DNA of 64,000 nt from positions 20,691,700 through 20,755,699 of the forward strand of contig OZ037768.1 in assembly GCA_964035545.1 (NCBI GenBank), written 5' to 3'. Source of the DNA: Bugula neritina. Lineage: Eukaryota; Animalia; Bryozoa. The position numbers and the translations under genes were made by a program. Positions 7,636-60,961 of the stretch are shown piece by piece. The first letter of the stretch is position 1. Each line of letters opens with the position of its first letter. The notes beneath the pieces are model-generated. The model was not told the DNA's origin. It ran no database searches and saw only the letters and a program-made list of their open reading frames with translations.

Positions 7636-19871
<12,236 letters not shown>

Positions 19872-22940: not shown

Positions 22941-23764
22941 GCAGGCAAAATTTTTTGGAAACTTTTTTCAAATCGATGTCTTTTACAATTTAAACTTCTT
23001 TTTAGCTTCTAGATGTTTATTTAATCTATTCTAAATTTGCTATGCTAAACAAAAAACCTGTAAATTATATAATGATATGCGGCAGATATTTGTTCTAAGG
23101 TATTATATTATTATCATTATTATTATAATGCAACTATACTTCATTATATGAATTATATTTTCATCCTGTTATTGATAATAATGTATTAATGATGTTTCTA
23201 CAATATACTACTTAGAATTTCTTGGTGATCTGTCTTGTATATATACTTTTTAGTGGATCGATTAAAAAACTAGATAGCATCTTGTCACTCTTGCAGAATT
23301 TAGAAAATGAGCTGTGTAGGAAACACAACTTCTCCAATTGTTCGTTTTTAGAAGGCACTGTAATCAAACTTTCAATACTCTAGATCAGGGCTGTCCAACA
23401 GGCGGCCCGGGGGCCGGATCCGGCCCCCCAGCTATATTTGTGTGACCCCCCAAGGTATAGCAAGTTACAAATTTTTGTTTATCAAATTTGCTAACTAGCC
23501 TGAAACAGCATCCCACTAAGAATTTCTATTGAAATTTAGTTTAAGTTCTTGTACAATATTGATCTGTGGGTGGCATGCGTGTTGCCTACTTGACATTGTT
23601 TAGCCTGAGATCAAACTACAACCAATAACAGCAAACTAGTCATTATAACCTGTTAGCTAGCAAGGCTGTAACTAGTAATGTAGACGCCTATATTATATAC
23701 TCATCTCTGCGCGTTCACTGAAGCGCAAAGTGATGCACAGTGCTTTTACTTAAAAAGAAATATA

Positions 23765-26700: not shown

Positions 26701-27312
26701 TCGCCTTTTTTATAGCTGATCAATAATAATGTTTGCCTTATAACTAATAAACCCATTCCTTTGCTAGTTTTCGTCCAAATAATCCACTTTTTTCAGATTT
26801 TTTCACAAGAAAATCACTAGAAATAAACTCAGAGAAGTGAAAAACACATCTATGATTATCTGCAAAAGTTTTTGCTTGTATATATAATAAACTAGCTTCA
26901 ATAATTTCAAGATTATATTCAATGGATTTGGACAAAGTTGTGGGAAGACAACTCCTGTAACATTTAAAAGAGCTTTTGTGACTAACTGGGTGGACAGAAA
27001 AATTTGGAGTTTTTATAAAAGAAAAGTGAAAAAAGTATCTATAATTATTAGCAAATTTATTTTGCTTATATAAAATAAATTAGCTTGAATAATTCCAAAA
27101 TATTTAGCTGATTCACAAAAACGTTAAGAGAAAACAACTCCTGTTTAATTTTAAAAGTTTGAAGCGCTTTTGTGGCTAACTGGGTGCACAGAACAGTCTA
27201 GAGTTTTCACAGATTAATTAGGACCCTTCAAACTTTCTATTTTTAAAAAAATTGCGTGGCCACCTCTCGAAGTGTAATGAGTGAAAGATAATTGGAGGTT
27301 ACTTCTAGACTA
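23765..27312 (-). mobile_element. Internally deleted Academ (AcademX-like) DNA transposon with decayed XPG-like nuclease and Cys-rich finger; left end tandemly duplicated
   Basis: TIR TAGTCTAGAAGTAACCTCC (23765, again at 24111) and GGAGGTTACTTCTAGACTA (ending 27312), with 3-bp ATA on both sides. Minus-strand remnants HEEADTQTLLHA, LCAALGRFHALTG..SAFYGKG, LPPTKDELNLHVKRANYQAAIW and CSACTDVCQCKDC. Confidence 0.8.
25537..25970. mobile_element. 434-bp TIR element inserted in the Academ XPG-like coding region
   Basis: Imperfect 24-bp TIR TGGTTTCTTCCCAGATAGACGCTA / TAGCCTCTATCTGGCATGACACCA, flanked by TGATTA on both sides (25531-25536 and 25971-25976). Internal TAGACGCTA copies and a (TAATAC)n core. 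Confidence 0.65.
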
Positions 27313-30300: not shown

Positions 30301-30348
30301 TTTGCATAGAACGTACCTCACCTTGAGTTAAGCCAGTTGATGTCGGAG

Positions 30349-33133
30349 TAGAGCTGAGGCCGTTTTAATAGATTCACCAGTACACAGCAAAGAAGTCCTT
30401 CAGCTCTGGTAATATCTAGTCACTCTTGTGTGACAATGCCACCTCACTACATCTCCCCTGTAGTCAGACAAAAAAAGAAGCAGTATGAAGTCATGATCAA
30501 TTCTAACAAAAACAAAGAAGCAAACAAACTGTTTATGGTAGCATTTACATATTGTTGTGGAATTATACCTCCGGGAACATGCATTCCGGAGTTGTCTTCT
30601 TTTACCTTTATTTTATTTTCACTTTTTTGCAAGAATGTTGAAGCTGGAAATTTGTTATCCGAAATTCGGGGTTTCCAAAGTTCGGCACCAACGATTTTCG
30701 GACAACAAAGGATCTGTTGTGTGTGTGTCTTTTGTTCTGCATGTATAAAAGCAGGCGAGCTCCAGTGGAGATTTAGTCTACCACTGGAGCTCGCTTGTGA
30801 AGGACCTATTTTTCTACGCTATAATAAAGACTGATTCTACCTACTACTTCATCACTCTTTTTGTTCTTGCACTAAGTTACATTCCACCCACAAGTTTATC
30901 ACATTGGTGGCAGCGGTGGGATTCCGAATAACTAAGTGCTAAGGAGAACAGGATGGCTCCAGGGGAGGAAGGGAGGACGACCCCTGGAGAATCAGACACC
31001 AACCCTCACTGTTGAGGCTTGGTTACAGCCCTCCGGAAATTGCAGGGGACGAGTTAGGCGCCACCTGGCGACAGGTACCGCTTCAAGCCCCCGATTTTCA
31101 GAAGTGAAGGGGATGCCGAGCAGTTCATCCGTGAGTTTGAAGATGTGGCTACCATTGCTGAATGGCCAGCTCGGGTGCGCATCCTTTAACCCCAGGGCTG
31201 TTTGACAGGCTGGGCCAAAAGTTTCGCTCTTGGACCCAATGAGGCTCACGCCCTACGAGCCCTCAGGACCTGGTTTGGCCTGACAGCCGAGGAAGCTTCG
31301 GATCGCCTACAGGCCATGAGGAGATATTGAAGGAGGCCTCTGGAGGACCACGCGAATGCGGTGGAACGTCTGGCTCAGACTGCTTTCAGTCATGCATCCA
31401 GCGCCGACAGGAAGCACCTGGTCTACAACGCGTTCTTCGAGAGTATAAACGACCCAGACTTACATCGCTATTGGCTAGCCGTCAAGGTCAGCAGTTTGGA
31501 AGAAGCCTTAGAGATAGGAAAAGCCTATATCCAGGGAGAGGCATTGAGGGGCGAGCTTCACCGCCCGCCAGGTGGTCAAAGACGATGAAAAAACCGCCAT
31601 GCTCCCAGCCCCGCAAGTGTCGGCAGCAACGACAAAGTCACCTGAGCAAACGCAGCTCACCGTGTTGATGGACATGGTGAAGGGCCTGCAGGCTACGATG
31701 ACTGAGTTGCAACAAAGCCAGGTAGATAGGCGAGCTCCCCGATCGCGGGACGACCCTGTCTACCCCTTTTAGCCTAACTGCTGGAGATGCGGGACGCCGG
31801 GGCATGTAAGGAGAAACTGCCCGAAAGGCCACCGGCCTTTAAACACCTGAGGCTCACGGTAATTTCCGCCGACCGTGGGCCCCAAGCCAATCCCATCCAG
31901 AATAGGGCTCAGAAGGAGCCGAGAGGACCTCCACAGAGCCTGCTGATACTGAGTGACAGGCACCACGGAGACCGAAATGTCTGCCGATCCTGCTGCCATG
32001 CCACTCGAGGCCCTGATGGAGTCAGAAGACGCAGGATGGCAGGCACCTCGAAGGCCGCAAGGTCTACCTGATTCTCCGGGCTGGCTACTCCGTAACGTAT
32101 TTTTCGCAGGTGGCGAATATTACACAAAAAACTATTAGCAAAACACATTGAGCAGTGTGCATCTAACATAGAAACAGTTATAAGCAAAAATAGCAATAGA
32201 GGCCTGGCAATATTAGGCCATTTCACCAGTCACCACAACCGGTGACGAGCAAAATTTGGCAGTATGTGAGTGGAGTGAGTGAGACTCCAGCAAATCCAAA
32301 TCATTGCTTACTGAAAATACTGTTAAAATAGATCATTAAAAAACCAGGCTAAAGGTGTTTTTACACCTTTATGATTTTGAGTCATCAATTAAATTTGGAA
32401 AAAAATATTGTATAGACCAACATGATTTAATCCAAATAGCTACCAGGATATCAAGTATGGATTAATTACTTAGAAACAGGCTCATGTAGTATTTCAAAAA
32501 AGTATCAAAGTGCCGACTAGCTGATTATTGCTAATGCGCAATAAAAAGATGCCCTAACTGCAAGCACATCATAGCAACAAATGCTACCAAGTGCTTCAAC
32601 TGTGATGAGTAAATTCCCACATATTAATAAAGTAAATATCATTGTACTTCATATTTGTTGAAGCATAGTTTTAAGTTGCCCTGCATGCATGTAGTAAGGA
32701 AGCAAGTTTCTGTAGCAATGGATCCCTCTGTTTCAGTAATATTTGTGAAGTATATGCTATCAATTTGAATTAATTTTCTTGCTTGGTATCACATTGCACA
32801 GCATTATTTATAATTAGCTTTTCTTCCAAGTGTTCCCCTTTGCCATTCAAAGAGGGGATTTCTCAAGTTGCTTTGCAAACATGTCCATAAAATAAACTAA
32901 TTGAGCAAAAAAGTGAATAATTTTCTATAACACCTGCTCAGTTGTGCTTGCAATTATATGTGTACACTCTAAGGTATTTTAAAGCACTTGACATTATAGA
33001 GCCAACAAATCACAATGACTAAGCTATTTGAACAGGGAGTACACTATGAAAAAGGAAACGGATACACAAGGCAAAGAATGTGTAACATGGTAAGCGATTT
33101 TGATCATGTTGCTGTAGCTTGTTTCATTACTTT
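30349..33133 (+). mobile_element. Decayed piggyBac-like transposase 3' region, copy 1 (30349-30552 plus about 32146-33133), split by an LTR retrotransposon
   Basis: Remnant KEVL.L.., K..VMI..NKNK..AFTY (the I.DYN..K region) and a Cys-rich tail KRCPNCKHIIATNATKCFNC..H..CPAC. Colinear with 40563-41744. Confidence 0.55.
30553..32110 (+). mobile_element. 3'-truncated Ty3/Gypsy-type LTR retrotransposon: 5' LTR 30553-30903, tRNA-Leu PBS 30905-30923, disrupted gag about 30953-31850
   Basis: TGT...ACA LTR with TATAAAA (about 30744) and AATAAA (about 30823). PBS TGGTGGCAGCGGTGGGATT. Gag motif FKPPIF..EGDAEQFIREFEDVA..AEW and zinc knuckle CWRCGTPGHVRRNC (about 31778). The left boundary is defined by comparison with the uninterrupted duplicate at about 40763. 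Confidence 0.88.
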
Positions 33134-33403
33134 ACTATTTTAATTATACCATGTTATTATACTAAGGGGTTATATTGTTATATTGAGTTTTGTTACCATT
33201 TGATCCATATAGTGAGTCAAACAAAACGGATCTCGGAGATGACCCTGCCCATGACTTCTTGTTAGATAAAGACGTGGGCTCGGTTACACTCTGTGACTTA
33301 TCTCGGCCCCCAGTTTATAACATGGCTCTTTATAAGCGCATGCCGAATTTCAGCGATAGCGAGACCGGCTTGTCAGCCTCTCCTATCTGTTTTAGGATGT
33401 AAC

Positions 33404-33960
33404 ATGGATGTCGAGGAGGTTGGACCGAGTCGTATCGACTCTCCTCCTCCACCGGCCCCTGTTCCGGCTCCTAGAAGCCAGCAGCGCACCGCTTCTCCAT
33501 CAGAGGTGCCTTCCACCAGCACCAGTGGCCCTGATTCCAACCTGGTTGAGCTTCATCTCTCCGTCGGGGAAGAGCAGGGCATACTGCTCGGTGAGGACCC
33601 CACGGATAAAGGTGAAGACAACTCCCATTTACTCCGCCAGTATTGGGTCTCTAGAGATACCAACCTCAAGATCGGCCAGACGTGCGGTGAGCCGAGCAAC
33701 TGTATCTGCTAACAGTGTCGGAGGAAGTTCTCCACACGGCGGCTGCGGGTTCACGCCCCTCAGCACTATATAAATGTGTTCTGCCCGTGTGGCGAATTTT
33801 CATATCAGCGCGACTAAGTGGCGAGACATAAGCGCATCTCGCGCTGCCACATGGGCTACACATTCGCGGTAGACCAGGCGAGCTTTCCAGAATTTCGGGA
33901 CCTGGTGCCGCCACACTAGCGGATCCTTGCAAACGGGCTGCTCTGGCTTCAAATTTGGAG
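33404..33960 (+). pseudogene. GC-rich disrupted ORF with Pro/Ser-rich N-terminus and two zinc-finger-like motifs; probably a mobile-element accessory ORF
   Basis: One frame with in-frame stops: MDVEEVGPS...NCIC*QCRRKFSTRRLRVHAPQHYINVFCPCGEFSYQRD*VARHKRISRCH. Base composition is sharply different from the flanks. Confidence 0.5.
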
Positions 33961-34379
33961 CTTCTGTTGGGCTTAGAGAAATCTTGCTGTGTAGGACATA
34001 TTACCCTTTTTTCTTTAGTAAGACCTATGATCAATTGCTTACGTTTTGATTGATTAATACATATATGTATATTTACCCTCTAAGCTTTTAGATTATTGCT
34101 ACATTGTCTGCAAATCATATATCTTGTGAACCAATTAATGCTAATATACTAAAATATTCAACGTAACAATTATAATTAGTTTAGAGTTACCTTACCTTAT
34201 ATTGGCTATTATTAAAACTGGTATGATACACATAATATAGTGCTATTTAACAATATTTCTACACACAGCTATATGAAATTGTCTTATCTTTAACTACTTT
34301 ACTCTATCATAATTTAGTATTTAGCTTTATTGTGCATTGTGTTTGTGTTATTAAGTACATTTGCAGCATATAAAAAAAA

Positions 34380-35670
34380 TGAGTAAACCTGGCAGAGGAG
34401 TATCAAACCTGCTTTGCCGTATCACCGGACTCCTAGAAAAGCCCCAGAAACAAAAGCAACCCCTACCAGCTTTCAAAGCTTAGCCAGGGACACTGCAGCA
34501 CACCGCCATGCCTATAGGGAGCCACAACATGACACTAATGTACCATCCCCACCGCAACTACCACCCGCACAACTACCTGACTTGGAACATGACCGACAAT
34601 ATGAGGATGATGAAGGATTCCTGACCGTAGATGAATAGAACTGTGAAACATCCCCATCTCCCAGGAGAAAGCAACACCGATCAGAAGCCAACTCCCCTGA
34701 TCTATTCCGGGACAATTCCCCTGAACCAGATGTCAGGCCCAAAACTATAAAGAGGAATTTCCAATACCCAGAAGCAATGAATCATCCATCAAGGTCATCT
34801 CACTTCCTTGACAAGGAAGAGCCAGAATATCATCAATCCAAAAGGAAAAGACCATCTATCTTGAAACATAGAAGTGGAGGAGACGAATATAGCCATATGC
34901 TGGCCCAGCCTTCAAAGAGGAGAGATTATTATAAAACACAACTACATGAATGTCCTCCAGACAACTCTGAGGATGAATGGCTACCCCTTAATCCTAGTAA
35001 AAACAGAAGCTCACAACCTGATGAGAGAAGACAACCTTTACCTGACATGGAGTTATTTCCCCAATCCCAACATTATCTCCCTTCACAAGAAGATGACCGG
35101 TATTTGACAAGAAAGGAAAACCTCCACCGCTCAAGATTCTTGTTAGAAGACGACAGCTACCAATACAGGAAGAATATGGATTGTAAACACAAACCTATTA
35201 CCCCAATTACCCAAGCACCAGTCAGACAAGTCATTGCGGTGACTAATAAACTACCAGATATAGAAAAATGGGCAAACAGTCCTTTTGATGAGCTAACTTG
35301 GAATGAGTTCAAAGAAAGCTTCATCATGCACTCCAGAGCCCTCTCTATCCCAGAAGAATCCTGGCCCAAAATCCTAGCACTATATCTTAAAGATGGTGCT
35401 AAGATAACTTACACTAAAATAATTAACAAATATCCTAGCCTCAATGAAGACTTCTACGGACTATTACAGGAGATGGATCAAAAATTCATCAACTCCGGAG
35501 GAGTTGTGCCAAGCTTTGACTTGAATAGCAGGAAGAAGCTGGATACGGAGTCAGTTGGAAAGTTCTACTCCACTATATGTGCAATGGCGAAGCGAGCTTA
35601 TCCTAACATTGATGAACATGCCAGGGACCAAATTATATTGGCCCAATTTATAAAAGGGCTCCCTTTTACA
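34380..35670 (+). mobile_element. Second LTR-retrotransposon gag (capsid) fragment, truncated at about 35670
   Basis: ORF 34777-35736: TWNEFKESF..., LALYLKDGAKITY, RKKLDTESVGKFYSTICAMAKRAYP, ILAQFIKGLP match the gag capsid pattern. The tail after about 35667 is an unrelated segment duplicated at 41867. Confidence 0.75.
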
Positions 35671-36999
35671 GTGAGAGAACTCCACTCCCTGGTGCATACC
35701 AACTCTGTTTGCTACCAAGAGATAAACAATTGTTGAAATTCAGAAGTTCTATTTGGAAAGAATATTACATGCTGTGAAAAAAAACAACTTGTAGCAATAA
35801 AATTATGATGTGATGGGCTTTAAGTAATAATTCTGATACACTTTTGTAGAACTATTAGTATAATACGGCACAACAACCCTCAACTTTTATGCATTGGATG
35901 AAGTCTGGAAGTTTACAGCTATTAAACAATTAATGCATTCTTAGTGGCGCTATTGCATCAGCTTTTTAGGAAACCAATTACAATCCTAAACAAATACATA
36001 GCAACTAGTTGAATTCAGGCTGTAAAAATCGTCTTGTATTGATATATTGTTGAAGTAAATTAGCACTTGGGCAATTTGATTTGCCAAAAGTGTTGGCCTG
36101 AGCAACATTTAGGGAAATAACTCCTGGACAGTTTTTATGGATGCTTGGAATGTGCAAAAAAGCACCAGAAAATCTGGACCAAGAAAAGAGGAGGGAAATC
36201 TTGTCCAGCTATCTTGGCAAAAACAAATGATGTATTGAAATCGTTGAAAGCTGCATTAGAAAAAAACACCGACAAAAGGTTTAATGGTAGGCAACTTTGT
36301 TGAAAATATAATGAAACCAGTGAAAGAGATGAAACAACTTCCAGTTTCATACAAGTCAAAGTGAAAAACCATAATAAAGAATTATATCCAAGAAGGAGAA
36401 AAGAGCAATCGCCCAATCTGCCAACGATGAAAGATGTGATGGTACTACTGCCAAGAACTTTATCTGACTGTATACATCAAAACCATCTCAATTTTAGTGA
36501 GATAGTTATCTGGAAACTTAGGAACAGAAAAAATTCACATACCTGCAGGGTCAAGGACTACTTTTGTTAAGTGTTAAATTAGCTTGAAAATGAAGCAAAC
36601 CTAAAAAATGCTAAAGGTTTAACTCTCAGAAACTAAGGCCAGTCAAGAACCACTGAGATTGGGAATGCTGCTCTTATTCAAACTGACATTCGCTACCTCT
36701 TACATTTAAACATGTGTATAGTTGAAAAAATATGAAAATACTGTTTTATTTTTGTTCCTGTTTACAAAGCTATATTAATTCTCAAGAAATGTATTCAGCT
36801 GTAGATGTTAAGAATCTCTGTGGGCTATAAATATGCTGATCATACCAAAAAATTATAAAGCTGATGAGATATTTTTTAGAAGGTGACGACTTGTATGATT
36901 TAACCCCTGATTATGTTCAACTCAGTACTAATTGCCTGCCTATAATATGGTGTATGAGAGTAATCTGAGCTTCGGATTCATACATAATTGCTGAAGTTG

Positions 37000-39490
37000 C
37001 CTGTGCTACCAACGGAACAGTGTAGTAATTAAAGGATTAGAAGCTCATGCTCCTTATCATGTTGTTCGTAAATCATGACCGATGTTTGACAAATCTAAGC
37101 AGTGTGAATCAAATGTTCAAAAAGAACTTTATGAGAGGCCAAATGCCCAGGCTCAATGGCACGCTTAGTCAGTGCCGACAAATGCCTACGTTGGTTAAAT
37201 ATCTGATAGCTTCGACGTTAGCACTATCAACTCAGATCTCCAAGTACCCCTACAAGATGCAAATGTGGTGTCAGATATTGTCAAGTCTCCAGACACACTT
37301 TTCAGCAAAAAAAATCACGTGTACTTAGAATGCCGATAGTGTAGATGTAGCTTACCGCTGTAGAGTAATAAAACAAAAGATCAGCAGGAAAAACTCCTTG
37401 CTTTACATTTTTGATGGCTCCTCTATAGAAGATGCCCAAGAGCATGTCTTTGCTTTGCAAGATATGCATTAAAGACATTTCTTGATTTGGATATTATATA
37501 TGTTACAACAGAACAGCACTTTCCCTCTCTGTATTCACAACCTCCATCATCTGTTTCAAGTTCTTTTAGCTCCCAGGTGACGCAAGGACACAGCATGCTG
37601 CGGCAAATTGTTTTATTTAGGAAAAATGTAAACTTTCATGCTACAGACGTGAAAGAAAAGTTGGCAAATGCAAAAAGTATACCGAGAAATTTAGGAGTAT
37701 ATGTTTTAGGTGCAGCAATATCTTGAAAAACTCAAGAGTTTGTAAAGCAATTAAATACAGATAACTGGGTCGAAAAAATATAGTGTCAGTACTGGTAGTC
37801 AATATATGCAGCAAGCCCATTTTTTGCAAGCAGCTCAAATTGTTAATCAGAAACAAAAACAAAACAAAATGACTCTTAAATTTTGGAGATAAAATTTTTA
37901 ACATGGGACCCTCTCTCATTCTCTGAGATAGTTGTTAGTGCATGTTCAGATATATCACCAGGAGGAGTTGATGCGATCTTAGAAATCCAACTAATGTTGC
38001 TATAACAAAGGTTGTGTATACGGAACGGTGATGGTAGCAATACTTGTTATTAGAGCTGTTGGCAGCGCGAGTACAGTCTACAAGCATCATGGAAAGCCAG
38101 TTTGTAGAAATTTTTTCCCTAAACTGCATGGTATAGGTCATCATAGGCTTGATTGTTCAGTAGCTCACCTTAAAAAGAATGGCTTGTCAATACGGCAGAA
38201 AAACTGAGGTGGCAGAAAAAGCAATACAAGAAGCATGAATTTTCTATCTACCAAAATTGTTTTTCATCAAACTTTGCTGAGGCGCATGCCATCAAGCTCC
38301 CTGGATGAATGCCTGGTTCCAAGGCTTACAATATATCTCTCCTACCATAAGAGAGGACATAGAGTTTGGTTTACACTTAGCATGTTTCAAATGTTGGAAT
38401 GGTTGTTGGCTTCACTACCTCTAGTAACTTGTGGCACTCTTAACTACCTTTCGTCATTTCTAGCAGATCAGCTAATCATCTTTGTTGGGTTTGTTAATCA
38501 AACAACACCTTTATTAACGAGTGAGTATATTCTAAATGGTGAAATAGCATTTAATCTTATGTTTTTCAACTAGTGGGGTCTGCAATGAAGGTGATAATCA
38601 TCAGCTGACCTATCTTATTGACGAAGAGCGACAAGTGATTTCACTTATTCACGATTACTTAGAGCGTCTCAATGTCAACCATGACACACCTCTCATACTG
38701 CATGCAGATTACTGCTGGTATGTGTATTAATTTCGATTTTTTTTCCATAATGTTTTTCTTTTAAAAACTTTTTCTTCTCAAAAATTTTTAATGTGTAATA
38801 ATTTCAGCATTTTCTTTTCAGTGGACAAAACAAAAACAGCTACAAGGTGCATTACCTTCTATGGAAAATGCTTACAAAACGAACTAGTCAAAACATCGAG
38901 CTTGACTTCATGATAGCTGAGCACACTAAGCTTGCCCCTGATCAACACTTTGGCAATCTCAAAAGGCGCTTTGTAAGAACTTTTGATTTCATCTTAGCCA
39001 GAGCTATATCAGGCTTGTTGGCCATTATGTATTGGTTATACATTGCTTTGTTTAGAAAATTAACTAAGTGCTTTGTTTGCTAGAACTCTTTGTCATATTG
39101 GCTTTTGCAGGTTGTCAACAACTCTGCAGTAAATAACACAATCGTTGGAGATGGTACAGGAGATACTGAGGAAGTGATCATGTATGACTGAGCTCAGTTT
39201 TTTTGCCGTCTGCCACACAGTCACGTACCATCAGATCGTCCACACTGCAGAGAGTGTGGCTCACTGCAAGATGCTGGTCGGAGAATCTGCGACAACTGAA
39301 ATTCTCCTTAAAAAGTGTTCTGCTGCTGATCGACTTCCAACTGCAATTCCATCAAAAGGTCTTGATCTTCAAAGGCAGAGGTATCTCTATGAGCATATCA
39401 GGGAGTTTTGTAAGCCAGATACTCAAAGATCTTGTTTGCCCTGGACCATATTTTCCTAAGCCTCAAGGGGAGGCTGCTGAGTACTATTAG
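37000..39490 (+). mobile_element. Decayed intron-containing Sola-like DDE transposase, interrupted by a 600-bp segment (37468-38073)
   Basis: Remnants YKHHGKPVCRNFFPKLHGIG, FAEAHAIKLPG, YLIDEE..VISLIHDYLE, LILHADYC|GQNKN (split by an intron at about 38718-38821), FMIAEHTKLAPDQHFGNLK and KGLDLQRQRYLYEHIREFC. Confidence 0.7.
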
Positions 39491-39829
39491 ATTATATTCA
39501 AACTAAAACAGAAGGAAATATGGGAGGTCTCGCGTTCAGATGGTACTGGCATGTAAAAGATCTACCTTCGCCTTTCTTTGAAAGAGTAGCCAGGTATTTG
39601 ATAAAGCATGCGTAACTCTCTGCACACTTTTCTCAGATCAGGACAGAAATGAAAGCAGGTCCTGGGTGTGTGGAGAAACAGGGATGCCAGCAAAAAGCCT
39701 CTACATTTCTGCTACTATGTTATTTGAGTGTTGTAAAGTTGCAATAACTCACTTGTTATTTGGATTAATGAATCCTACGTTATAAATTTTTTCATCTTAT
39801 TCATTATTCATCGATATTTATTTTGTTTG

Positions 39830-40555
39830 AACAATACTTTAGATACCAGAAAGCGAATGGCCAAGCTTGCGGGCCAAAAGGTTGCTTTCTACGTGGTAGG
39901 AGAATGGATCCCTGCCATAGTGGACCACTTGTTCCACGCCGTGATGAACACAATCAAAGGGCCTTTGAGAGTTGCTTGGTGGAAGTCGTTGGTGAACCAC
40001 ATTGCTAACATACATGTCCATGAAACACCTGAATTTCCTGTATGTCTACATGGTGCAGAGTCTCAAATGACTATAGGTGACGATGGCTTTGAATATATAC
40101 CAGCTTATATTCAGAAAGGTGATTATTAGATACTAGATACATTTAGCAGTAACAATAAGTGAATCCAATTAGTGCTAGAAACTCCCTATGATAGCAATAT
40201 GTGCTTCTGCTGTAACTTGGCTGCTCGTGAATTGCCAGTAATTTGATTCGTGACTTTCACTTAAGAAAGCTATAGTAACTAAACTATTCCTTTGACTTTT
40301 ATTACCGATGTAACAGAGTAGGGGTGATTAAAACATCATTCTAGTATGTACATAGCAAAAGTGTTATTGCCTAATAATGCTTGTAGGAAGTGAGTTGCAT
40401 GACGAGATGGAAATCATGGTATTAGAAAGTAAGTTGATCAAAGCTATCAATAATGCTACCAAAGCTACCACAAGTGAGCTTGAAAGCTTCCACAGTTGTC
40501 TCAATCGAAATGCGCCAAAAATGGAGGGGTTTTCCTATTCAGGACAGCTCAGCAG
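39830..40555 (+). mobile_element. Kolobok-like DDE transposase fragment (two exons)
   Basis: EWIPAIVDHLF..WKSLVNHIANIH..CLHG, then an intron (about 40119-40387), then TTSELESFHSCLNRNAPKMEGFSY. This matches the T..LE.FH....PK..F third-catalytic-residue motif. Confidence 0.6.
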
Positions 40556-40562
40556 GTAGGAA

Positions 40563-41744
40563 TAGAGCTGAGGCCGTTTTGATAGATTCACCAGCACACC
40601 GCAAAGAAGTCCTTCTGCTCTAGTAATACCTAGTCACTCTTGTGTGACAATGCCATCTCAATACATCTCCCCCGCAGTCGAACAAAATAAGATGCAAGAT
40701 CAACTCATGATCGACTATAACAAAAACAAAGCCAACAAAGTTTTTACAGTAGCATTTACATATCATCTGAAGCCATCTCGGTGGTCATTTAACATAAAAA
40801 AAGTTTAAGCTAAAGTAGCTACAAAAATAGGCCTGGCAGTATAAAGCCATCTCACCACAACTAGTGAAATCAGCAAAATAGGGCAGAGCTTGAGAGTGGG
40901 CTGAGTGAAACCCATGCAAATCTGAATCATTACTAACAGAAAATATGGTTAAACTTGATAGTTTATTAGCAAGTCAAATTAGGTGTTTTTACACCTTTAT
41001 GATTTTGAGCCATCAATTAAGTTTGACAAATTTTTCTTATTGCATAGATAAACGATATCAAGTATAGATTGATTACTTAGAAACAGGCTTATGTATTTCA
41101 AAAAAGCATCAAAGTGCCGATTAGCTGATTATTGCTAATGCATAATAAAAAGAAGATACCCCAACTGCAAGCACATCATAGCAACAAATGCTACCAAGTG
41201 TTTCAACTGCGGTGAGTAAATTCTCACATATCAATAAAGTAATTGTCATCGTACTTCATATTTGTTGAAGCTTAGTTTTAAGTTGTCCTGCATGCATGCA
41301 GTAGGAAGCAAGTTTCTGTAGCAATGGATCTCTCTGTTTTAGTAATATTTGTGAAGTGCGTATATGCAATTAAATTAAATTAATTTTCTTGCTTGGCATC
41401 ACATTGCACAGCATTATTTATTACTAGTTTTTCTTATAAGTGTTCCCTGTTGCCATTCAAAGAGGAGATCTTTCAAGTTGTTTTGCAAACCTGTCCATAA
41501 AATAAACTAATTAAGCAATAAATGTAAATATTTGTCTTTAACACCTGTTCAGTTGTGCTTGCAATTATATGTGTACACTCTAGGGTATTATAAAGCACTT
41601 GACATTATAGAGCAAACAAATCACAATGACTAAGCTATTTGAACAGGGAGTTCACTATAAAAAAGGTAATAGATACACAAGGCAAAGAATGTGTAACATG
41701 GTAAGCGATTTTGACCATGTTGCTGTAGCTTGTTTCATTACTTT
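40563..41744 (+). mobile_element. Decayed piggyBac-like transposase 3' region, copy 2 (uninterrupted)
   Basis: KEVLLL, QLMIDYNKNK..AFTYHLKPSRW and RRYPNCKHIIATNATKCFNCGE..CPAC. Direct repeat of 30349-33133 without the LTR insert. Confidence 0.55.
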
Positions 41745-42719
41745 CTATGTCACTCGATATAAATGTGTTACGCTCGGACATTTTTTTTTTCAAACTTTAG
41801 TAATAAGTGCTAGAATAACTGTCCAATAATTGCAAAATTAAGTCGTTGGATGTAATTTTTCAAGTATACAGTGAGAAAACTCCAGTCCCTGGTGCATACC
41901 AGCTCTGTTTGCTACCAGGAGATAAACAATTGTTGAAATTCAGAAGTTTTACTTGGAAAGAATATAACACGCTGTGAAAGAAAAACATGTGTTGTAGTAA
42001 TAAAATTCAAAAGTTCGAAACTGCCCGGTAGGGTTATAAAAACTTTCATCAACTTAGAAAGAATGCTGTGCGTTTGCAGTGCTTTTATGTCACTTGTAAA
42101 TTGTATTTTTCATTACAGATTCCATCCAAGGTGTACCAATATCGGTGTAGTTGTGTGTGGTGGTAACAATCTGGGTGGAGAACAGAGTCCAGTCAACTGA
42201 ACTTGCAAGCTGCAACTATTTTATGCATAGAAAGAAAAATACTGCTCAACTCTATTTCATTAATGCTTTAAAAAATAGAAATAAAATACAAGAGAACTGG
42301 AAACAACCTGATAAAACAAACCACAGTGCCCAAAAACATCTAGACACATATCCAAGGTAAAATCTGTAGCCACACCGTTATGAGCATCACCAACAAACCT
42401 CAAAAAAAAAAATTTGCACAACTTTGTAAATACAACACTCAAATAATTATTTTTTATTATTTCATGTCGGTAACCCAATACTGAGATGAAAAAACTACCT
42501 AAATAATGTAGCTCAGCCTACACTGCATGTCACAAATGTTAATAAAACTTGCTTAATTTAATCTGGAAAATCGTTAATTGAAACCAGATTTCCTAACTTG
42601 ACCATATTGTACATAAATATAAAAAGAGGGTCTAGGACAAATTTAAATGGTAAAAAGCGTAACTGAGTTGATTATCTCTAGAAAACAATATACACATTTT
42701 CCTAACTCCACTAAAAATA

Positions 42720-43700
42720 TTAGTGAGGCGGAGGCAGTGGATTTACAAATGCTCAAAACTCTGCACGGTGAAGAGATTTCTGAATTGCACAAAATGATTC
42801 ATCAACTTCAGTGAGTTGGGTGACTGAAGTGCTGGTAGACCAGTTGCAAGAGCAGTTGACAGAAGCCAACCCAGCATATATAAAAACCAAAGATGGCTGT
42901 AGATAGTGGAAAATATAGTGAAAATATAAGCAGATAAATAATATTTCTAGGGTGTTGGAAATGACAACAAAGCTGGTACGTGGGATTGAATGATCTTTCA
43001 TTGTCTGGCTTTTGAATCACTTCAATGATATAGGAAGTGCACACATAGGCCATAAAATCCTAATGGCGTTGAGGCCACTTATGACATTTTGCAGTTTATA
43101 CAACTTTAAAGTGTAGGGGTTTAAAAAATTATAGCCATTTGTTTCTCAGTGAGAACTATATAACTATATATTAATAACTAGATTGGCACCAAAAATTAAT
43201 TTATAAATAGTGCCGCCAATAAATTTAAACTGAAAGCTGTGTTGTTGATACTTGGTATCAACAACTACGCCCCATCAAATAATATATAGCAGCTTTTTCA
43301 GTGCGAAGTAAAGTTAGAATAAAATAAATATAAACATACATCTCTCATAGGCCAAGCAGTAGAAGCTATACTGGAACCCCTGTGTTTTTAATGAGTTAGA
43401 GAAATTTTTAGGGCATGATGTTATAGTTAAATTGCAACATTCTCTCATTAGATGGTTGGCTATTGCGTTTCGAAGAACAGTCAAAGTTGCGAAAGATGAG
43501 TCTCATGCTTCTTCTGAACGGAAACAGTTCAGTAATGTGGAAAGCCATTCTGACTAATATTAAAATTAAATACAAATCATCTGGTGAACCTGTGTGGTTA
43601 CAAGTATTTTTAATAGATGGAGTGCAAGTGGAACTGCTTTCCAGATGTGGAAAATAGGCTTAACGACCCATTTTCACTGTCTGGTAATATTCACTATTTG
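42720..43700 (+). mobile_element. Heavily decayed DDE (hAT-like) transposase remnant; partial second copy at about 45800-46180
   Basis: Plus-strand remnants TKDGRKYSENIR, LPPSSF..M..QAVEAILE, ELEKFLGHDVI..CN.HSLDG and KYKSSGEP..ENRL. Direct repeat 42500-43410 / 45620-46180. Confidence 0.4.
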
Positions 43701-46199
43701 TTACCTTTTTTAAAAAATATTTTGAGCAACGGTGCAGCAGGAAAATATATGCAAATCAGATTTATGCGACACTGATGTTGGATAAGGTTCAAAATTAGTT
43801 GGTGGTAGAAGAATTGTTCGGTAAGAGCAGGACTGTTTGGCAGAGTTCAATTTTAGTTACATCTTGTAGCTAAACAGTTATGAGCACCACCAACAAACAG
43901 TAAAAAATCTTTGCAAAACTTTAAATACAACACTCAAATATTTATTTTACAAAATATTGATTCTGCTCTGTGCTTCTAATAATTAAAAATCAGTTGTTCG
44001 ATTAGCACTAGACCTCGACTGCTTTTATTAAATTTTTTATTATTTCGCACTGTGGTTTAACTGCAGAACTCTTACGCTTCTAATCCTGTTGCTTTCGCTA
44101 ATTTGAGTTCCTTAAAAAATGGTCATATTGATTTTTAGGTCATGAATTTCTCAAAAGTAGCTCAACAAAAGCTAAAGATGCTCTTAAACAGTTGCCCAAT
44201 AAGTTTGCTAGTACGCTACCTGCAGATGATCTTGACTCATCTTGAAAATATTATAAATGCTTAGGATAAAAATGTTGGGTGTTCAGATAAATGTAACGCA
44301 TTTAAGACAATTTTTGATTTGGATATGGTATATGTTACAACAGAGCAGCACTTTCCCTCTGTATTCACAACCTCCATCATCATCTGTTTCAAGTTTTGTT
44401 AGCTCCAAGGTAATGCAAGGACACAGCATGCTGGGGTAAAGTATTTTAGTTAGAAAAAAATGTAAACTTTCATGCTACAGCGGGAGACTTGAAAGAAAAG
44501 TTGGCAAATGCAAACAGTAGACTGAAAAATGTAAGACTAGATCTTCTAGGCACAGCATTATCTTGAAAAACGCAAGAGTTTGTAAAGAAATTAAATGCAT
44601 ATAGCTGGTTTGAAAAAAATATAGCTTCAGTACTGGTAGTCAATATATGCAGCAAGCCCATTCTTTACTAACAATTCAAATTGTTAATCTGAAAAAACAA
44701 AATGGCTACCTTAAATCTTAAAGATTAAGTTCTCAACGGGGGAATCTCTCTAATTCTTTGAACTAGTTACTAGTGCATGTTCAGATATACCACCAGGAAG
44801 AGTTGATGCAATCTTAGAAATTCAATTAATGTTGCTACAACAAAGGTTGTGTGTATATGGAACAATAATGGTAGCAATACTTGTTATTAGAGCTGTTGGC
44901 AGCGTGAGTACCAGCTCTGGTGTGCCTAAGCTCTCAGAACTATAGTTTGTAGATGAGAAAACTGCTGATGAGACAGAAGATCATGAATTCTGTTAGCACG
45001 TATTGTGGCAGATTTTCTGAATTTGTTGAGTAACTTTATAGGATTGTTTTAGATGTAGTTAGCATCTTATTTTTGCTTTCCTTTTTTTTCATTTCATGTT
45101 TGCAGGTCTCTCAACTAAATCTATCACTGATCATTAATAGAATTGGTTAGATCATCTCCATAGCTACTGTTTTTTACTTTTCTACTAGCAATCAACTACT
45201 TTTAATGTCTTAGAGCAGGAATAGAGCGGTCATGATGTGTTATGCACCATACCTTTCCACCTTTTCAGGAACTTCACAACAGCTCTTTTTATTACCACTA
45301 TCTTTAAACTAAAAGTTGTTCTGGGAAATATTGAACCTACAATTCTGATAAATTTTCAGATAGTTATTGAGTTCAATATATTTATTAATATGAATGAATT
45401 TTAAAAACACTAAATTGACCAAGAAACAATTTGTGTAGGCAATTAGTTTGTTGCCTTTCCATAGCTTTAGTGTATTTTGAATGGGACCTAAAATTTAATC
45501 ATTTTATTAAAAATTTAAAAGTTCATGCCAAGCACATTTTCATATACAAGTGTAAAAATTAGAAACAGGTGTATTCCTATTAATAAAGCGCTTGATGTAG
45601 CATTCCAAATGCACTTCTATAAGAAAAAGCCTACGCAGACAGAGATATTGTAGACTAAATTTGGAAAATCATAAATTGAAAGCTAGATGTTGAAACCTGA
45701 CCATACTTGTAAATATATAAAAAAGGTGGACATATTTAAATGTCAAAAAGCATAACATATGTTGAGTATACGCGCCTTCTAAACTCTACTAAACATAGCA
45801 GTGAGGCCGCAGTGGATTTACAAATGCTCAAAACTCTGCATGCTGAAGAGATTTCTGAATTGCACAAAAAGATTTCTTAACTTCAGTGAGTTGGGCGAAT
45901 CTGAAGGGCTGGTAGATTAGTTCCGAGAGCAGTTGACAAAAGCCAAGCCAGCATCTATCGCAACCAAAGATGGCCGCAAATATAGTGAAAATATACGCAA
46001 ATATATATTTCTAGGGTGTTGGAAATGACAACAAAGCTTACATGTGGGATTCGGCGATCTCCCACCGTCTAGCTTTTGCATTTCTTCAATGATATAGAAA
46101 GTTCACACATCAGCCATGGTTCAAGCAGTAGAAGCAATACTGGAACAACTGTGTATTTAAAGAGTTACAGAAATTTTCAAGACAGAATTTAGGACGGAA

Positions 46200-46860
46200 G
46201 TGCTAGCCCTAGTGCGCCACAAAATAAAAACACACTTCACTCTTGACAACAAAGAAACCGAACAAGTTAGTACCTTCAAATATTTAGGAAGCACACTGTC
46301 AGAGACCAGACTAATAGGTCATGAAAACATTGAGAGAATAAGGAAATATTCACAAAATGTAGGATTCCTCTACCGCCTATTAAAAGATAAAGTGCCATGG
46401 AAAGCCAATAAAATCATACACACAGGAATATCAAGACCAATCTTACTTTATGGTAGTGAAAAATGGAATATCAACAAGAATATGAAAAAGATCACTGCAG
46501 CATATATTAAGGTCATAAGGATAATAAATGGCGTAACCAGGATGGATAAGATTAGAAATTTAGGCCTATGCAAACGAATTCATGTACTACCAATGGCAGA
46601 GAAAATTTTAAAACCACCAGATTAGGTGGTATGGCTACATTAGACGAAGACCAGCAGACCATCTAACAATGGAAGCCCTGAATTACACAATACTAGCAAC
46701 AAGAGTTAGTGGCAGACTACAGAAGCAATGGCACCAGTACATTGACGATTATATATAAGAGAGAAATACCAATTTAGAGAGAGTAAACGCAGAAAAAGCA
46801 TTTGAAAACAGACAAGTATGGAGAAGCCTGACTAACTCAAACTGTCTTACCTGACACGCA
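46200..46860 (+). mobile_element. 5'-truncated RTE-clade LINE (RT thumb/C-terminal region)
   Basis: EQVSTFKYLGS, RPILLYGSEKW, IRIINGVTRMDKIRN and, after a frameshift, RLGWYGYIRRR-like and GR.QKQW. Confidence 0.85.
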
Positions 46861-47289
46861 TTATGATTAGCCTAATCTGGAGTGTAGTAAGCAGATAAGC
46901 ATGGGCAAAAATAAAAGCAAAACAATACTAAAATTGATACATAAAAATAACCAAAAAAATTAAAAAATGATGTAGAAAAGTTGCAGTGCTTTGAAAAAGG
47001 AAAGAAAAAAAGGGAAAAGGAAGGGAATGATGAAGAAATCCACGTTGTGTATAACTATAAGTATTAGTATTAGTATATATAAAAAATATTAAACTAAAGA
47101 GTTCCTGTGCAATATCAACACGCATCTGTTAAGATTATTACTATTGAAGTATAACTATAACTGTAAGACTAAGAGTAAGTATTAGATTAAGATATTACTA
47201 TTAGTATTAGACTTGGTCATAAAGATAAGTAATTATTAATTAAAAATTAATAATAATATTACTATTACTATTACTATTAGTATTAGTAT

Positions 47290-47520
47290 TGGTGTTACCC
47301 GTTAGATGAGATATTCGCTCCTTTGTTCCTCAGAGATTGTATAATATAAATATTAAAAAATTTCACAGTGACTAAAACAGAAATAATTTGGTCGATCACA
47401 GAGAATTAGTGTAACGATGTAGAGATACTTATTTTTTTTTCTTTAGTCTCTCGGCGTGACTTCTTCATGTAGGCCGCCATCTCAAGCCTCGCTATTTCTC
47501 GTTAGTCTGTTAAGTCTTTA
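47290..47520 (-). promoter_or_regulatory. Candidate leftward promoter/first exon divergent from VPS53
   Basis: Local CpG-containing island with YY1-like GCCGCCATCT (47473-47482). Minus-strand donor CGG|GTAACA at 47298 is followed at once by a (TAATAC/TAATAG)n tract, as seen after other first exons in the window. Confidence 0.35.
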
Positions 47521-48920
47521 TTTCTTAACAAGTTTAGTTTAGTTTTTCAAGTACAGATACAGCGAGCCTGTTCTACCTGTTTCAACTTGTTACTTCCGAT
47601 TGTTTTAGACAATAGCTTGCCATTAAATTTAACAATAATAATTATTATTATTATTACATAAAACCGGCTTTATATATTGCCCTTTAAACCTTTGCATAAA
47701 AAACAAATGTGTGTAATACTTCTTAATTTTTATGGCAAGCGCAATAGCTGCATCTAATGAATTTTATTTTTTGTCAGCAATATCTTTTTCTCTTGCAGTA
47801 ACAGTTAGACTTACTCTTAGTGTTACACTTACAGTTACTCTTACTGTTAGACTTAGTGTTAGTGTTAGTGAGTTACACCTACTCTTAGTCTTACAATAAC
47901 AGTAGCCGGTAGCATAAGTACAGCCTACAACTAGTACTACAAGTACAAGCACAGCTATAAACTTAGTTAGACTATCATTCTATTAGACTTAGTAAGTGTA
48001 CGTAGTAGCAGTGTGAGTGTATGGTTATACTTGTAGTTGTACTTGTAGATTATCATTATAAGTTTAAGTATAACTATAAGTATAAGATTAAGTATAAGTA
48101 TAGTTAATGTTATAGAAAATATTAATACTATTAGTATTATAATTATTATTACTATTAGTATTACTATTGGTATTATTTTTACTTTTAATTATATTATAAA
48201 CCTAAAGTGATTATTATTATAATGCTGATACTCTAATGTTTATACTAATACTAAGAGATATACTAATAAGAGATATGAGGATCAGCACTGATCACACACA
48301 GACAGGCTAGTTAGCCTGTTAAGTTAATCTGCACAAGAATGTTAACACTTTTTAGATTACTGTCCAAGTACTGACAACTTAGTTTTTTATATGAGGCACA
48401 CCCCTTCTTCCCTCTAGGGAGGTCCAGTGTGGAAATAACATCGACAGGTATCGACAGACTAATAGTAATACTAATACCAATGGTATTACTATTTTGTGGC
48501 TTCTGGTTTTTGTTTCACTGACCAGCTATCACTGCTAGTATAAGTATAACTTTCTCTTTGCCTATTACTATTAGTATTATATTAAAGATAATCTGAGCTT
48601 AAGCTTAAATTTGAGATCACCTGCGACTGCAACATGTGGAAGTTCCACTCCTGAATTTACTTCATGTTTTGAAAATAAAATGATATGCTCTTACTGTCCT
48701 GGTCTGATACTGATGCTAACAGTAGTAGTGTAAATTAATTAATTATGCATTTATTTTTATACTTATAGTTTCAGTAATTTTATATTTACTCAAATGTTAC
48801 AAAGTTTCGTTAAAATATTTACTTAGCTATGTAATTGAATAATAACTAGCAAAAAGAATATTATTTTATGAATTTTGTTTTTAATGTATTGGTATGACTC
48901 ACTATGATTATTCAACTAGA

Positions 48921-60844: not shown

Positions 60845-60961
60845 GAGATATGCTGTCGGCCTACCTATAGCAATTAGAAAAGAAGTTACTAGCCTGCTTT
60901 TCACTAGAAGCATAAACTCGCATGTAGTATTAGTCTAAAGTTGGTTGTTATATCACCATAA

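What the first reader, a model, noticed from the sequence alone, without database searches (positions are those of the whole stretch)
30349..47520. Candidate flamenco-like unistrand piRNA cluster: 17 kb of dead transposon fragments, all co-oriented, next to a divergent promoter
Seen: no host gene between 23 and 48.9 kb. From 30.3 to 46.9 kb, fragments of about eight unrelated families (piggyBac-like, Gypsy LTR+gag, zinc-finger ORF, second gag, Sola-like, Kolobok-like, hAT-like, RTE LINE) abut one another. All are truncated, and every one I can orient is coded on the + strand (1 in 128 if eight independent random orientations). At the right edge is a promoter-like island with a minus-strand splice donor pointing into the block. 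Known: unistrand piRNA clusters such as Drosophila flamenco are long, spliced Pol II transcripts packed with TE fragments antisense to transcription. Inference: a leftward transcript from about 47.5 kb would read all these TEs antisense and act as a TE-silencing memory locus, here rich in DNA-transposon coding pieces. The Academ at 23.8-27.3 kb has the opposite orientation and may lie beyond the cluster boundary.
Basis: partly seen in the sequence, partly recalled or inferred. Interest (0 to 1): 0.85.

Follow-up and report, generated by a model that had tools for sequence, protein, structure and literature searches.

The report
Same-direction pile of old transposon fragments
A 17-kb gap next to the VPS53 gene of a bryozoan genome holds old, broken transposon pieces that do all point one way, but local duplications explain part of this, and no RNA data could be obtained, so it is most likely an ordinary transposon graveyard and not a shown piRNA source.

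Summary
The block at 30.3-46.9 kb is real. It is a unique mosaic of truncated, old repeat fragments, 66-88% identical to their nearest relatives in the genome. Every piece I could orient is sense on the + strand: a Ty3/Gypsy 5' fragment, a zinc-finger-ORF piece, a gag-like piece, a DUF7869-type piece, two copies of a deleted element and a LINE 3' end.

The orientations are not eight independent draws. Two 1.45-kb segments (R1) and the two deleted-element copies diverged by the same amount (K2P 0.13 and 0.14). That fits one direct segmental duplication. A third pair (X) is an older local duplicate. This leaves 6-7 independent events, or about 1 in 32 to 1 in 64. The scan covers about 3,370 windows of this genome and has flagged at least ten look-alike loci, so that is unremarkable.

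The "promoter island" is a real CpG cluster (47393-47500), 1.4 kb upstream of the VPS53 start codon. Its direction cannot be read from sequence, and the proposed minus-strand donor is weak.

The block is 14-65 times smaller than the Drosophila flamenco-syntenic clusters, is not Gypsy-dominated, and holds no young insertion. The scan made the same call on other DNA of this genome.

The parts
30342..30552 (.). R1 copy A, part 1 (local duplicate of 40556-40763)
   Evidence: 86.5% identity, K2P 0.149. R1 has no other full copies in the genome.
30553..32154 (+). 5' fragment (UTR, gag, first codons of pol) of a GC-rich Ty3/Gypsy LTR retrotransposon, inserted in R1-A; frameshifted and 3'-truncated
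   Evidence: more than 30 genomic copies at 73-80% identity; gag is 67% aa-identical to the 306-aa gag ORF of L006; the 1236-aa pol ORF of L006 carries protease, RVT_1, RNase H and integrase.
32155..33138 (.). R1 copy A, part 2 (duplicate of 40781-41748)
   Evidence: 946 aligned bases, K2P 0.130 +- 0.013.
33139..33950 (+). CpG- and GC-rich fragment of a zinc-finger-ORF repeat family
   Evidence: 33228-33820 matches, inverted and at 71% identity, a 261-aa minus-strand ORF 288 kb downstream on the same chromosome; 29% aa match to the L015 ORF. CpG o/e about 1.
33951..35666 (+). Upstream region and N-terminal half (aa 48-480) of a 934-969-aa ORF family with no Pfam domain; a weak lead points to gag/protease-like proteins
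   Evidence: 87-88% DNA and 81% aa identity to intact ORFs in L003 and L004; no Pfam match; one public homologue; weak atlas lead to gag/PEG10-like clusters.
35667..35804 (.). R1 copy A, part 3 (duplicate of 41867-42007)
   Evidence: K2P 0.102 +- 0.029.
35805..37465 (.). Unclassified, almost unique sequence; its last 210 bases (37256-37462) belong to a low-copy repeat also found 470 kb upstream
   Evidence: The minus-strand ORF 36138-36476 has no relatives and no Pfam match.
37466..38072 (+). F_R2a: internally deleted, 3'-truncated copy of a low-copy element
   Evidence: 66-72% identity to L009 and L010, whose ORFs of 150 aa or more lie on the matching strand. It shares the internal deletion of F_R2b. 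K2P to F_R2b is 0.141 +- 0.017.
38073..39772 (+). E2: 5'-truncated fragment of a DUF7869-type gene, presumably a DNA-transposon transposase of unassigned superfamily
   Evidence: 55-73% aa identity to the L002 ORFs, in N-to-C order on the + strand; weak DUF7869 hit at 38802-39080; over 2000 public relatives, and 8 of 10 long ones carry DUF7869.
39773..40555 (.). Unclassified; a 130-aa open + frame (39737-40126) has one distant relative
   Evidence: 29% aa identity, E 5e-10, to C8:9094239; that relative has a sub-threshold MULE hit (E 0.008).
40556..42007 (.). R1 copy B, uninterrupted
42357..43415 (.). X1: older local duplicate of X2; not a genome-wide repeat; orientation unknown
   Evidence: K2P 0.20-0.24. 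Its minus-strand ORFs have no relatives beyond the local copy.
43856..46193 (.). X2, split by F_R2b
   Evidence: 43856-43948, 45658-46117 and 46104-46184 match X1 in the same order.
44061..45550 (+). F_R2b: second copy of the internally deleted element, lying inside X2
46194..46899 (+). 5'-truncated 3' end of a LINE, followed by an A-rich tail
   Evidence: 77% aa identity to the L008 ORF. The adjacent L008 ORF has RVT_1 at E 9e-11. AT skew is +0.32.
47393..47500 (.). CpG cluster (7 CpG in 108 bases), unique in the genome; putative promoter, most simply that of VPS53
   Evidence: Clusters of the same kind lie at 18.04-18.28, 20.54-20.64 and 60.98-61.15 kb.
48921..49020 (+). VPS53 first coding exon
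   Evidence: sequence. Vps53_N in the next two exon segments. The match of this exon to the N-terminus of human VPS53 rests on my own recollection.
23746..27316 (.).
   Evidence: over 30 full-length copies at 94-96% identity, 2094 candidates; other copies carry only ORFs of 128 aa or less.
48265..48457 (.). Very young 193-bp high-copy repeat between the CpG cluster and the VPS53 ATG, flanked by hexamer microsatellites
   Evidence: 95-100% identity to dozens of scored copies, 1219 candidates.

Best explanation
The block is an ordinary, decaying transposon graveyard. It fills the spacer between two gene groups that are transcribed away from each other: the DHX38/PRP16-like helicase (minus strand, left) and VPS53 (plus strand, right).

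Shown:
- It was built from a few old insertions. These are a Gypsy fragment, a zinc-finger-ORF element, a gag-like element, a DUF7869-type element, an internally deleted low-copy element and a LINE 3' end.
- It also holds at least two rounds of direct local duplication, which by nature keep orientation. Later deletions left truncated pieces abutting one another.
- The CpG cluster at 47.4-47.5 kb is real.

Inferred:
- The shared + orientation of the 6-7 independent pieces is a chance run of the kind expected many times in a 216-Mb, repeat-rich genome.
- The CpG cluster is the VPS53 promoter.
- The locus has no dedicated function.
For: - The block is unique as a whole; only its pieces recur.
- The R1 pair (K2P 0.130 +- 0.013 over 946 bases) and the F_R2 pair (0.141 +- 0.017) have indistinguishable divergence, lie in the same order, and F_R2a and F_R2b share one internal deletion. 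That fits one segmental duplication. The X pair is an older one (0.20-0.24).
- Junctions are truncation against truncation. F_R2a is 3'-truncated exactly where a 5'-truncated E2 begins at 38073.
- All pieces are old, at 66-88% identity to their best relatives. 24-mers shared with the two sampled relatives of each family: 16% for the 33.1-35.7 kb insert, 3% for Gypsy and LINE, about 0 for the others.
- The only young insertions of the region lie outside the block, at 23746-27316 and 48265-48457.
- The young, abundant LINE family returned by the RVT_1 search has no match anywhere in the window.
- Other repeat-rich loci fetched here mix orientations: L007, L009, L010 and L014.
- The CpG cluster resembles those next to the other gene starts in the window, and the AT skew turns to the sign seen over VPS53 at about 47.3 kb.
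- At least ten loci with the same description were flagged among about 3,370 windows of this genome.
Against: - Six or seven out of six or seven same-sense pieces is still a 2-3% event for a single pre-specified locus.
- Unclassified segments of the block are also A-rich on the + strand (AT skew +0.05 to +0.17). The bias may therefore extend further than I can orient, or a minus-strand transcript may have shaped composition.
- Poly(A)-signal hexamers are as sparse on the block's minus strand (1.65 per kb) as on the sense strands of the two flanking genes (1.6-2.4 per kb). Base composition alone explains this (observed/expected 1.20 against 1.34 on the plus strand).
- I have no genome-wide background for run lengths of co-oriented fragments, and no RNA data.
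- An earlier follow-up on another locus of this genome (s1-441661) reported about fifteen co-oriented remnants. If correct, that would be hard to ascribe to chance.
Confidence: 0.62

Rival explanations
1. Small one-strand piRNA source locus. The CpG-cluster promoter at 47.4-47.5 kb also fires leftward. The minus-strand transcript reads all oriented fragments antisense and is processed into piRNAs.
For: - All 6-7 orientable pieces are + sense.
- A real CpG cluster sits at the right edge.
- The genome encodes several Piwi-domain genes, and bryozoans are reported to have PIWI1 and PIWI2 (PMC11114477).
- Many look-alike loci were flagged in this genome.
- The minus strand of the block is T-rich and poor in poly(A) hexamers, like the sense strands of the neighbouring genes.
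Against: - No RNA evidence of any kind.
- Orientation is partly inherited through direct duplications.
- The fragments are stale and mostly share no 24-mers with the sampled relatives.
- The block holds no young insertion, although very young high-copy elements inserted just outside it.
- It is 16.6 kb against 227-1,085 kb for the flam-syntenic clusters, and the strand bias there is driven by Gypsy elements (PMC10643416). Here Gypsy is one 1.6-kb piece.
- The proposed donor is weak.
- The poly(A)-hexamer deficit is explained by composition.
Confidence: 0.15
2. The block lies inside a minus-strand transcription unit that is not a piRNA precursor, such as an upstream antisense or long non-coding RNA from the VPS53 promoter, or a long intron of an unannotated gene. 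Sense-oriented insertions were removed by selection because they bring poly(A) and splice signals. This is the same process that gives antisense bias in introns.
For: - The same co-orientation and composition evidence as above.
- The scan also flagged an intron with only antisense elements in this genome (s1-449203).
- Antisense bias of transposons in transcribed regions is established knowledge (my own, not tested here).
Against: - No minus-strand exon or conserved ORF was found between 18 and 47 kb.
- Rfam finds nothing.
- The nearest minus-strand gene starts at about 18 kb and runs away from the block.
- 28 poly(A) hexamers remain on the minus strand, which is no fewer than expected.
Confidence: 0.1
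3. The whole block is one composite mobile element, or cargo of a Helitron-like carrier, that is repeated elsewhere.
For: None found.
Against: A search of the whole genome with the full 17 kb returned only piecewise matches at unrelated places, never two families side by side in the same arrangement. R1 and X exist only here.
Confidence: 0.02

Closest known systems
Drosophila flamenco and flam-like one-strand piRNA clusters (PMC10643416)
   Same: An intergenic pile of truncated transposon fragments pointing one way, with a promoter-like element at one end.
   Different: It is 16.6 kb against 227-1,085 kb. Gypsy is a minor component and not the driver of the bias. The fragments are old, no recent captures are present, and no piRNA or transcript evidence exists. 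The promoter candidate is shared with, or belongs to, a housekeeping gene.
Mammalian pachytene piRNA clusters with two-way promoters (my own knowledge)
   Same: Tens of kb in size, transcribed by Pol II from a promoter that can be shared with a diverging transcript.
   Different: Those clusters are transposon-poor and are defined by small-RNA data. Nothing of that kind is available here.
Antisense bias of transposons in introns and transcribed regions (my own knowledge)
   Same: It would give the same one-way arrangement without any piRNA function.
   Different: No transcript covering the block is known, and the flanking genes are both transcribed away from it.
Ordinary nested-insertion and segmental-duplication 'graveyards' in gene-poor spacers
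   Same: Truncated old fragments, insertions within insertions, local direct duplicates of equal age, and deletion junctions.
   Different: The complete co-orientation of the orientable pieces is somewhat unusual for a single locus (about 1/32-1/64).

Membership tests
flamenco-like one-strand piRNA cluster | Abundant 24-32-nt, 1U-biased small RNAs mapping almost only to one strand | not testable with these tools
flamenco-like one-strand piRNA cluster | One Pol II promoter at one end driving a long, often spliced, precursor through the cluster | tested here: inconclusive
   A CpG cluster at 47393-47500 is present and unique. Its direction is unknown. The proposed minus-strand donor TAA|GTATCT is weak. 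The cluster lies 1.4 kb upstream of the VPS53 ATG.
flamenco-like one-strand piRNA cluster | Transposon fragments strongly biased to one orientation | tested here: met
   All 6-7 independent orientable pieces are + sense. No minus-sense coding remnant was found. About half of the block cannot be oriented.
flamenco-like one-strand piRNA cluster | Size of hundreds of kb (227-1,085 kb in the flam-syntenic clusters, PMC10643416) | tested here: not met
   The block spans 30342-46899, or 16.6 kb.
flamenco-like one-strand piRNA cluster | Enrichment of Gypsy/ERV elements, which drive the strand bias | tested here: not met
   There is one 1.6-kb Gypsy 5' fragment, about 10% of the block.
flamenco-like one-strand piRNA cluster | Content close enough to active elements to guide silencing, with captures of recent invaders | tested here: not met
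   Pieces are 66-88% identical to relatives. Shared 24-mers are 0-3%, except 16% for one element. Young elements lie outside the block. The abundant young LINE family has no match. Only two relatives per family were sampled.
any animal piRNA cluster | PIWI-clade machinery encoded in the genome | tested here: inconclusive
   Several Piwi-domain loci exist. The search does not separate the AGO clade from the PIWI clade. PMC11114477 reports PIWI1 and PIWI2 in bryozoans.
local direct (segmental) duplication | Paired direct repeats in the same order, with equal divergence, absent elsewhere in the genome | tested here: met
   R1 K2P is 0.130 +- 0.013 and F_R2 is 0.141 +- 0.017, in the same order and with a shared internal deletion. 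R1 has no other full copy.
Ty3/Gypsy LTR retrotransposon (piece at 30553-32154) | gag followed by pol with protease, RT, RNase H and integrase in that order | tested here: met
   This order is seen in the more intact relative L006. The window piece covers only gag and the first codons of pol.

The most novel reading that the evidence does not exclude
This bryozoan carries many small (15-35 kb) one-strand transposon piles that sit beside ordinary gene promoters. Each is read antisense by divergent transcription from that promoter and supplies piRNAs. That would be a dispersed, promoter-borrowing form of the flamenco principle in a lophotrochozoan, and this locus (VPS53 promoter, 30.3-47.3 kb) would be one of them.
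Probability: 0.1. Interest if true: 0.6.

Novelty: already known. Interest (0 to 1): 0.22.

Why it matters
If small RNAs showed that this locus and its look-alikes are piRNA sources, they would be the first piRNA clusters described in a bryozoan. They would also show that the one-strand trap layout arose outside arthropods at a much smaller scale. As things stand, the value of this check is cautionary. Counting co-oriented fragments overstates significance when local duplications are present and when thousands of windows are screened. The repeated 'flamenco-like' calls in this genome should be settled together, with one genome-wide orientation test and one small-RNA data set, and not locus by locus.

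Tried and rejected
- **RNA evidence.** I did not try again and could not use read laying. No place was reported as human-like.
- **Exact-protein look-ups.** Three window ORFs gave nothing in public assemblies.
- **Pfam on window pieces.** About 30 open segments on both strands gave only a sub-threshold DUF7869 hit.
- **PDB sequence searches.** These gave nothing.
- **Protein-atlas leads.** These were weak, with scores of 0.78-0.83.
- **A library from the RVT_1 search.** It returned near-identical copies of a few young LINE families and matched nothing in the window.
- **Poly(A)-hexamer depletion on the minus strand.** This is explained by base composition (a first version timed out).
- **Rfam and tRNA scans.** Both were empty.
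- **One composite element repeated elsewhere.** Rejected.
- **R1-A and R1-B as LTRs of one element.** Rejected, because R1 has no other copy in the genome.
- **X as the body of the LINE at 46.2-46.9 kb.** Not supported: there is no protein match to the RT of relative L008 upstream of 46194.

Full report
**Setting**

The window is G000:C4:20,691,700-20,755,699 of a 216-Mb assembly. An earlier follow-up note of this scan calls the organism a bryozoan. I could not check that myself.

The genome is AT-rich, at 29-37% GC outside the block, and CpG-depleted, with CpG o/e 0.2-0.6.

- **Left of the finding.** A DHX38/PRP16-like helicase lies on the minus strand. Its exon-like open segments span about 8.7-16.3 kb, and I recognised the family from my own knowledge of the human protein. 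A 320-aa ORF follows at 21978-22940 (+). It has a 90% identical inverted copy at 59972-60909.
- **Right of the finding.** VPS53 starts at ATG 48921. The next two exon segments match Vps53_N at E 2e-7 and 6e-12.

The block therefore lies between genes that are transcribed away from it on both sides.

Largely yes.

A search of the whole genome with the full 17 kb found only piecewise matches at unrelated places. The block is therefore not a composite element repeated elsewhere. Self-comparison, own-genome searches and comparison with fifteen fetched relatives give the anatomy below.

| Coordinates | Piece | Main evidence |
|---|---|---|
| 30342-30552, 32155-33138, 35667-35804 | R1 copy A, split by two inserts | |
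| 30553-32154 | First insert: 5' 1.6 kb of a GC-rich Ty3/Gypsy element | gag 67% aa-identical to relative L006, whose 1236-aa pol has protease, RVT_1, RNase H and integrase |
| 33139-33950 | Second insert, part 1: zinc-finger-ORF family piece | inverted 71% match to a 261-aa minus-strand ORF 288 kb away |
| 33951-35666 | Second insert, part 2: N-terminal half of a 934-969-aa ORF family | 81% aa identity to L003/L004; no Pfam domain |
| 35805-37465 | Almost unique sequence | |
| 37466-38072 | F_R2a, an internally deleted low-copy element | |
| 38073-39772 | E2, a 5'-truncated piece | relatives carry DUF7869: over 2000 public relatives, 8 of 10 long ones with the domain |
| 39773-40555 | Unclassified | one distant + sense relative |
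| 40556-42007 | R1 copy B, uninterrupted | |
| 42357-43415 | X1 | |
| 43856-46193 | X2, split by F_R2b | |
| 44061-45550 | F_R2b | |
| 46194-46899 | LINE 3' end with an A-rich tail | 77% aa to L008; RVT_1 in the adjacent L008 ORF |

Every piece that can be oriented from long ORFs in relatives is + sense. I found no minus-sense coding remnant. Minus-strand open segments in the unclassified parts have no Pfam match and no relatives beyond a local copy. About half of the block cannot be oriented at all.

- **Family names.** Of the eight names, only Gypsy and LINE are verified. The names piggyBac, Sola, Kolobok and hAT found no support.
- **The 'Academ'.** The element at 23746-27316 is a young (94-96% identity), very abundant 3.55-kb element. 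Other copies carry only short ORFs, so its orientation is undetermined.
- **Independence.**
  - R1 is not a genome-wide repeat. Its only full copies are the two local ones.
  - F_R2a and F_R2b are far closer to each other (87%) than to any other copy (66-72%), and they share one internal deletion.
  - The R1 pair has K2P 0.130 +- 0.013 and the F_R2 pair 0.141 +- 0.017, and the two pairs lie in the same order. One direct segmental duplication is the simplest account.
  - X1 and X2 are an older local pair (K2P 0.20-0.24) that exists almost only here.
  - Direct duplication preserves orientation by construction.

I therefore count 6-7 independent oriented events: Gypsy, the zinc-finger piece, the gag-like piece, F_R2 once or twice, E2 and the LINE. 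All on one strand has a two-sided probability of 1/32 to 1/64, not 1/128.

**Look-elsewhere effect**

The scan has notes on about 3,370 windows of this genome. At least ten of them carry the same 'flamenco-like one-strand' call.

The genome is full of repeats. One search gave 2192 RVT_1 candidates, many with intact ORFs of up to about 1,580 aa. A 2-3% event per repeat-rich block is then expected many times over.

Other repeat-rich loci that I fetched mix orientations. L007 has a LINE in each direction. L009 and L014 have an integrase opposite to the matching element. L010 has E2 opposite to F_R2. That sample is small and anecdotal, and I could not compute a proper genome-wide background.

**The promoter**

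The CpG cluster is real. There are seven CpGs in 47393-47500, with o/e 1.1-1.3 against a background median of 3 CpGs per 300 bases. The sequence is unique in the genome.

The window holds comparable clusters at 18.04-18.28 kb (beside the 5' end of the helicase gene), at 20.54-20.64 kb and at 60.98-61.15 kb (beside the inverted ORF copy). Such clusters therefore seem to mark gene starts here.

This one lies 1.4 kb upstream of the VPS53 ATG. The stretch between is filled by hexamer microsatellites and a 193-bp repeat that is 95-100% identical to its other copies. The + strand turns from A-rich to T-rich at about 47.3 kb, which is the sign seen over VPS53.

The simplest reading is that this is the VPS53 promoter, with a 5'-UTR intron. 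Whether it also fires leftward cannot be read from sequence. The minus-strand donor is weak, and the plus-strand candidates are no better.

**Does the block look like a working trap?**

Not particularly.

- Its pieces are 66-88% identical to their nearest relatives.
- The fraction of 24-mers shared with the two sampled relatives of each family is 16% for the 33.1-35.7 kb insert, about 3% for Gypsy and LINE, and about zero for the rest.
- The two young insertions of the region both lie outside it.
- The young, abundant LINE family returned by the RVT_1 search has no match in the window.
- By the criteria of van Lopik et al. (PMC10643416), flam-syntenic clusters span 227-1,085 kb and their strand bias is driven by Gypsy elements. 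This block is 16.6 kb with one 1.6-kb Gypsy piece.

**Points that keep the idea alive**

- The unclassified segments are also A-rich on the + strand.
- The minus strand is as poor in poly(A) hexamers as the sense strands of the neighbouring genes. The observed/expected ratios show that this follows from composition.
- Piwi-domain genes exist in the genome, and PIWI1 and PIWI2 are reported for bryozoans (PMC11114477).
- An earlier follow-up (s1-441661) reported about fifteen co-oriented remnants at another locus. I did not check it.

**What could not be done**

I made no further attempt, so there is no evidence for or against a minus-strand transcript or small RNAs. No place was reported as human-like.

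**Verdict**

The co-oriented mosaic is real, but it is weaker evidence than claimed.

| Reading | Confidence |
|---|---|
| Ordinary old transposon graveyard shaped by a few insertions, direct local duplications and deletions, next to the VPS53 promoter | about 0.6 |
| One-strand piRNA source driven by leftward transcription from that promoter | about 0.15 |
| Non-piRNA minus-strand transcript that selects for antisense insertions | about 0.1 |

The scan has made the same call on other DNA of this genome. These calls are best resolved together, by one small-RNA data set and one genome-wide orientation test.

Noticed in passing
window 48265-48457 (with hexamer arrays at about 47160-47300, 47800-48200 and 48470-48590): A 193-bp repeat is 95-100% identical to dozens of scored copies (1219 candidates). 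It is regularly accompanied by TATTAG/TACTAT-type hexamer microsatellites at its other sites too. It looks like a very young SINE- or MITE-like element. No tRNA or Rfam match was found.
   Followed up: partly
window 23746-27316: A 3.55-kb element is 94-96% identical to more than 30 full-length copies (2094 candidates). It has an internal tandem duplication of about 350 bp (23760-24111 against 24106-24479). All copies examined carry only short ORFs, so it is a recently amplified non-autonomous element.
   Followed up: partly
window 21978-22940 (+), 59972-60909 (-), and just beyond the window end (C4:20756026-20756282): This is a local three-copy family of an intact 320-aa ORF with no Pfam domain. 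One copy is inverted and lies within the span of VPS53. No other copies were listed in the genome-wide search. A CpG cluster lies beside the inverted copy.
   Followed up: partly
L006 (C2:809000-817000), L005 (C4:16627000-16635000): A Ty3/Gypsy family has about 53% GC in a 33% GC genome. It has many copies, including an intact 1236-aa pol ORF and a 306-aa gag ORF. The composition suggests a recent arrival or strong compositional autonomy.
   Followed up: no
L003 2988-5894 (-), L004 3283-6084 (-): Two intact 934-969-aa ORFs have no Pfam domain and only one public homologue (P0001, 79% identity). A weak atlas lead points to gag/PEG10-like proteins. They could be an active unclassified element or a domesticated gag.
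   Followed up: partly
G000:C2:12,874,000-12,917,200: Four tandem loci with Piwi-domain exons lie about 10-20 kb apart. Single loci lie on C4:9.39 Mb, C2:7.08 Mb and contig C216. This looks like a local expansion of an Argonaute/PIWI gene.
   Followed up: no
window 13327-13960 and 51109-51597: Two 66-bp-period tandem arrays lie within the spans of the helicase gene and of VPS53, with units 90-96% alike in the first and about 80-90% in the second. Both translate to Tyr/Ser/Ile/Leu-rich open frames on both strands.
   Followed up: no
window 33150-34100: The zinc-finger-ORF piece keeps CpG o/e of about 1.0 at 50-57% GC (up to 24 CpG per 300 bases). This is unlike the rest of the CpG-depleted block. 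It may have escaped methylation or be younger than its neighbours.
   Followed up: no
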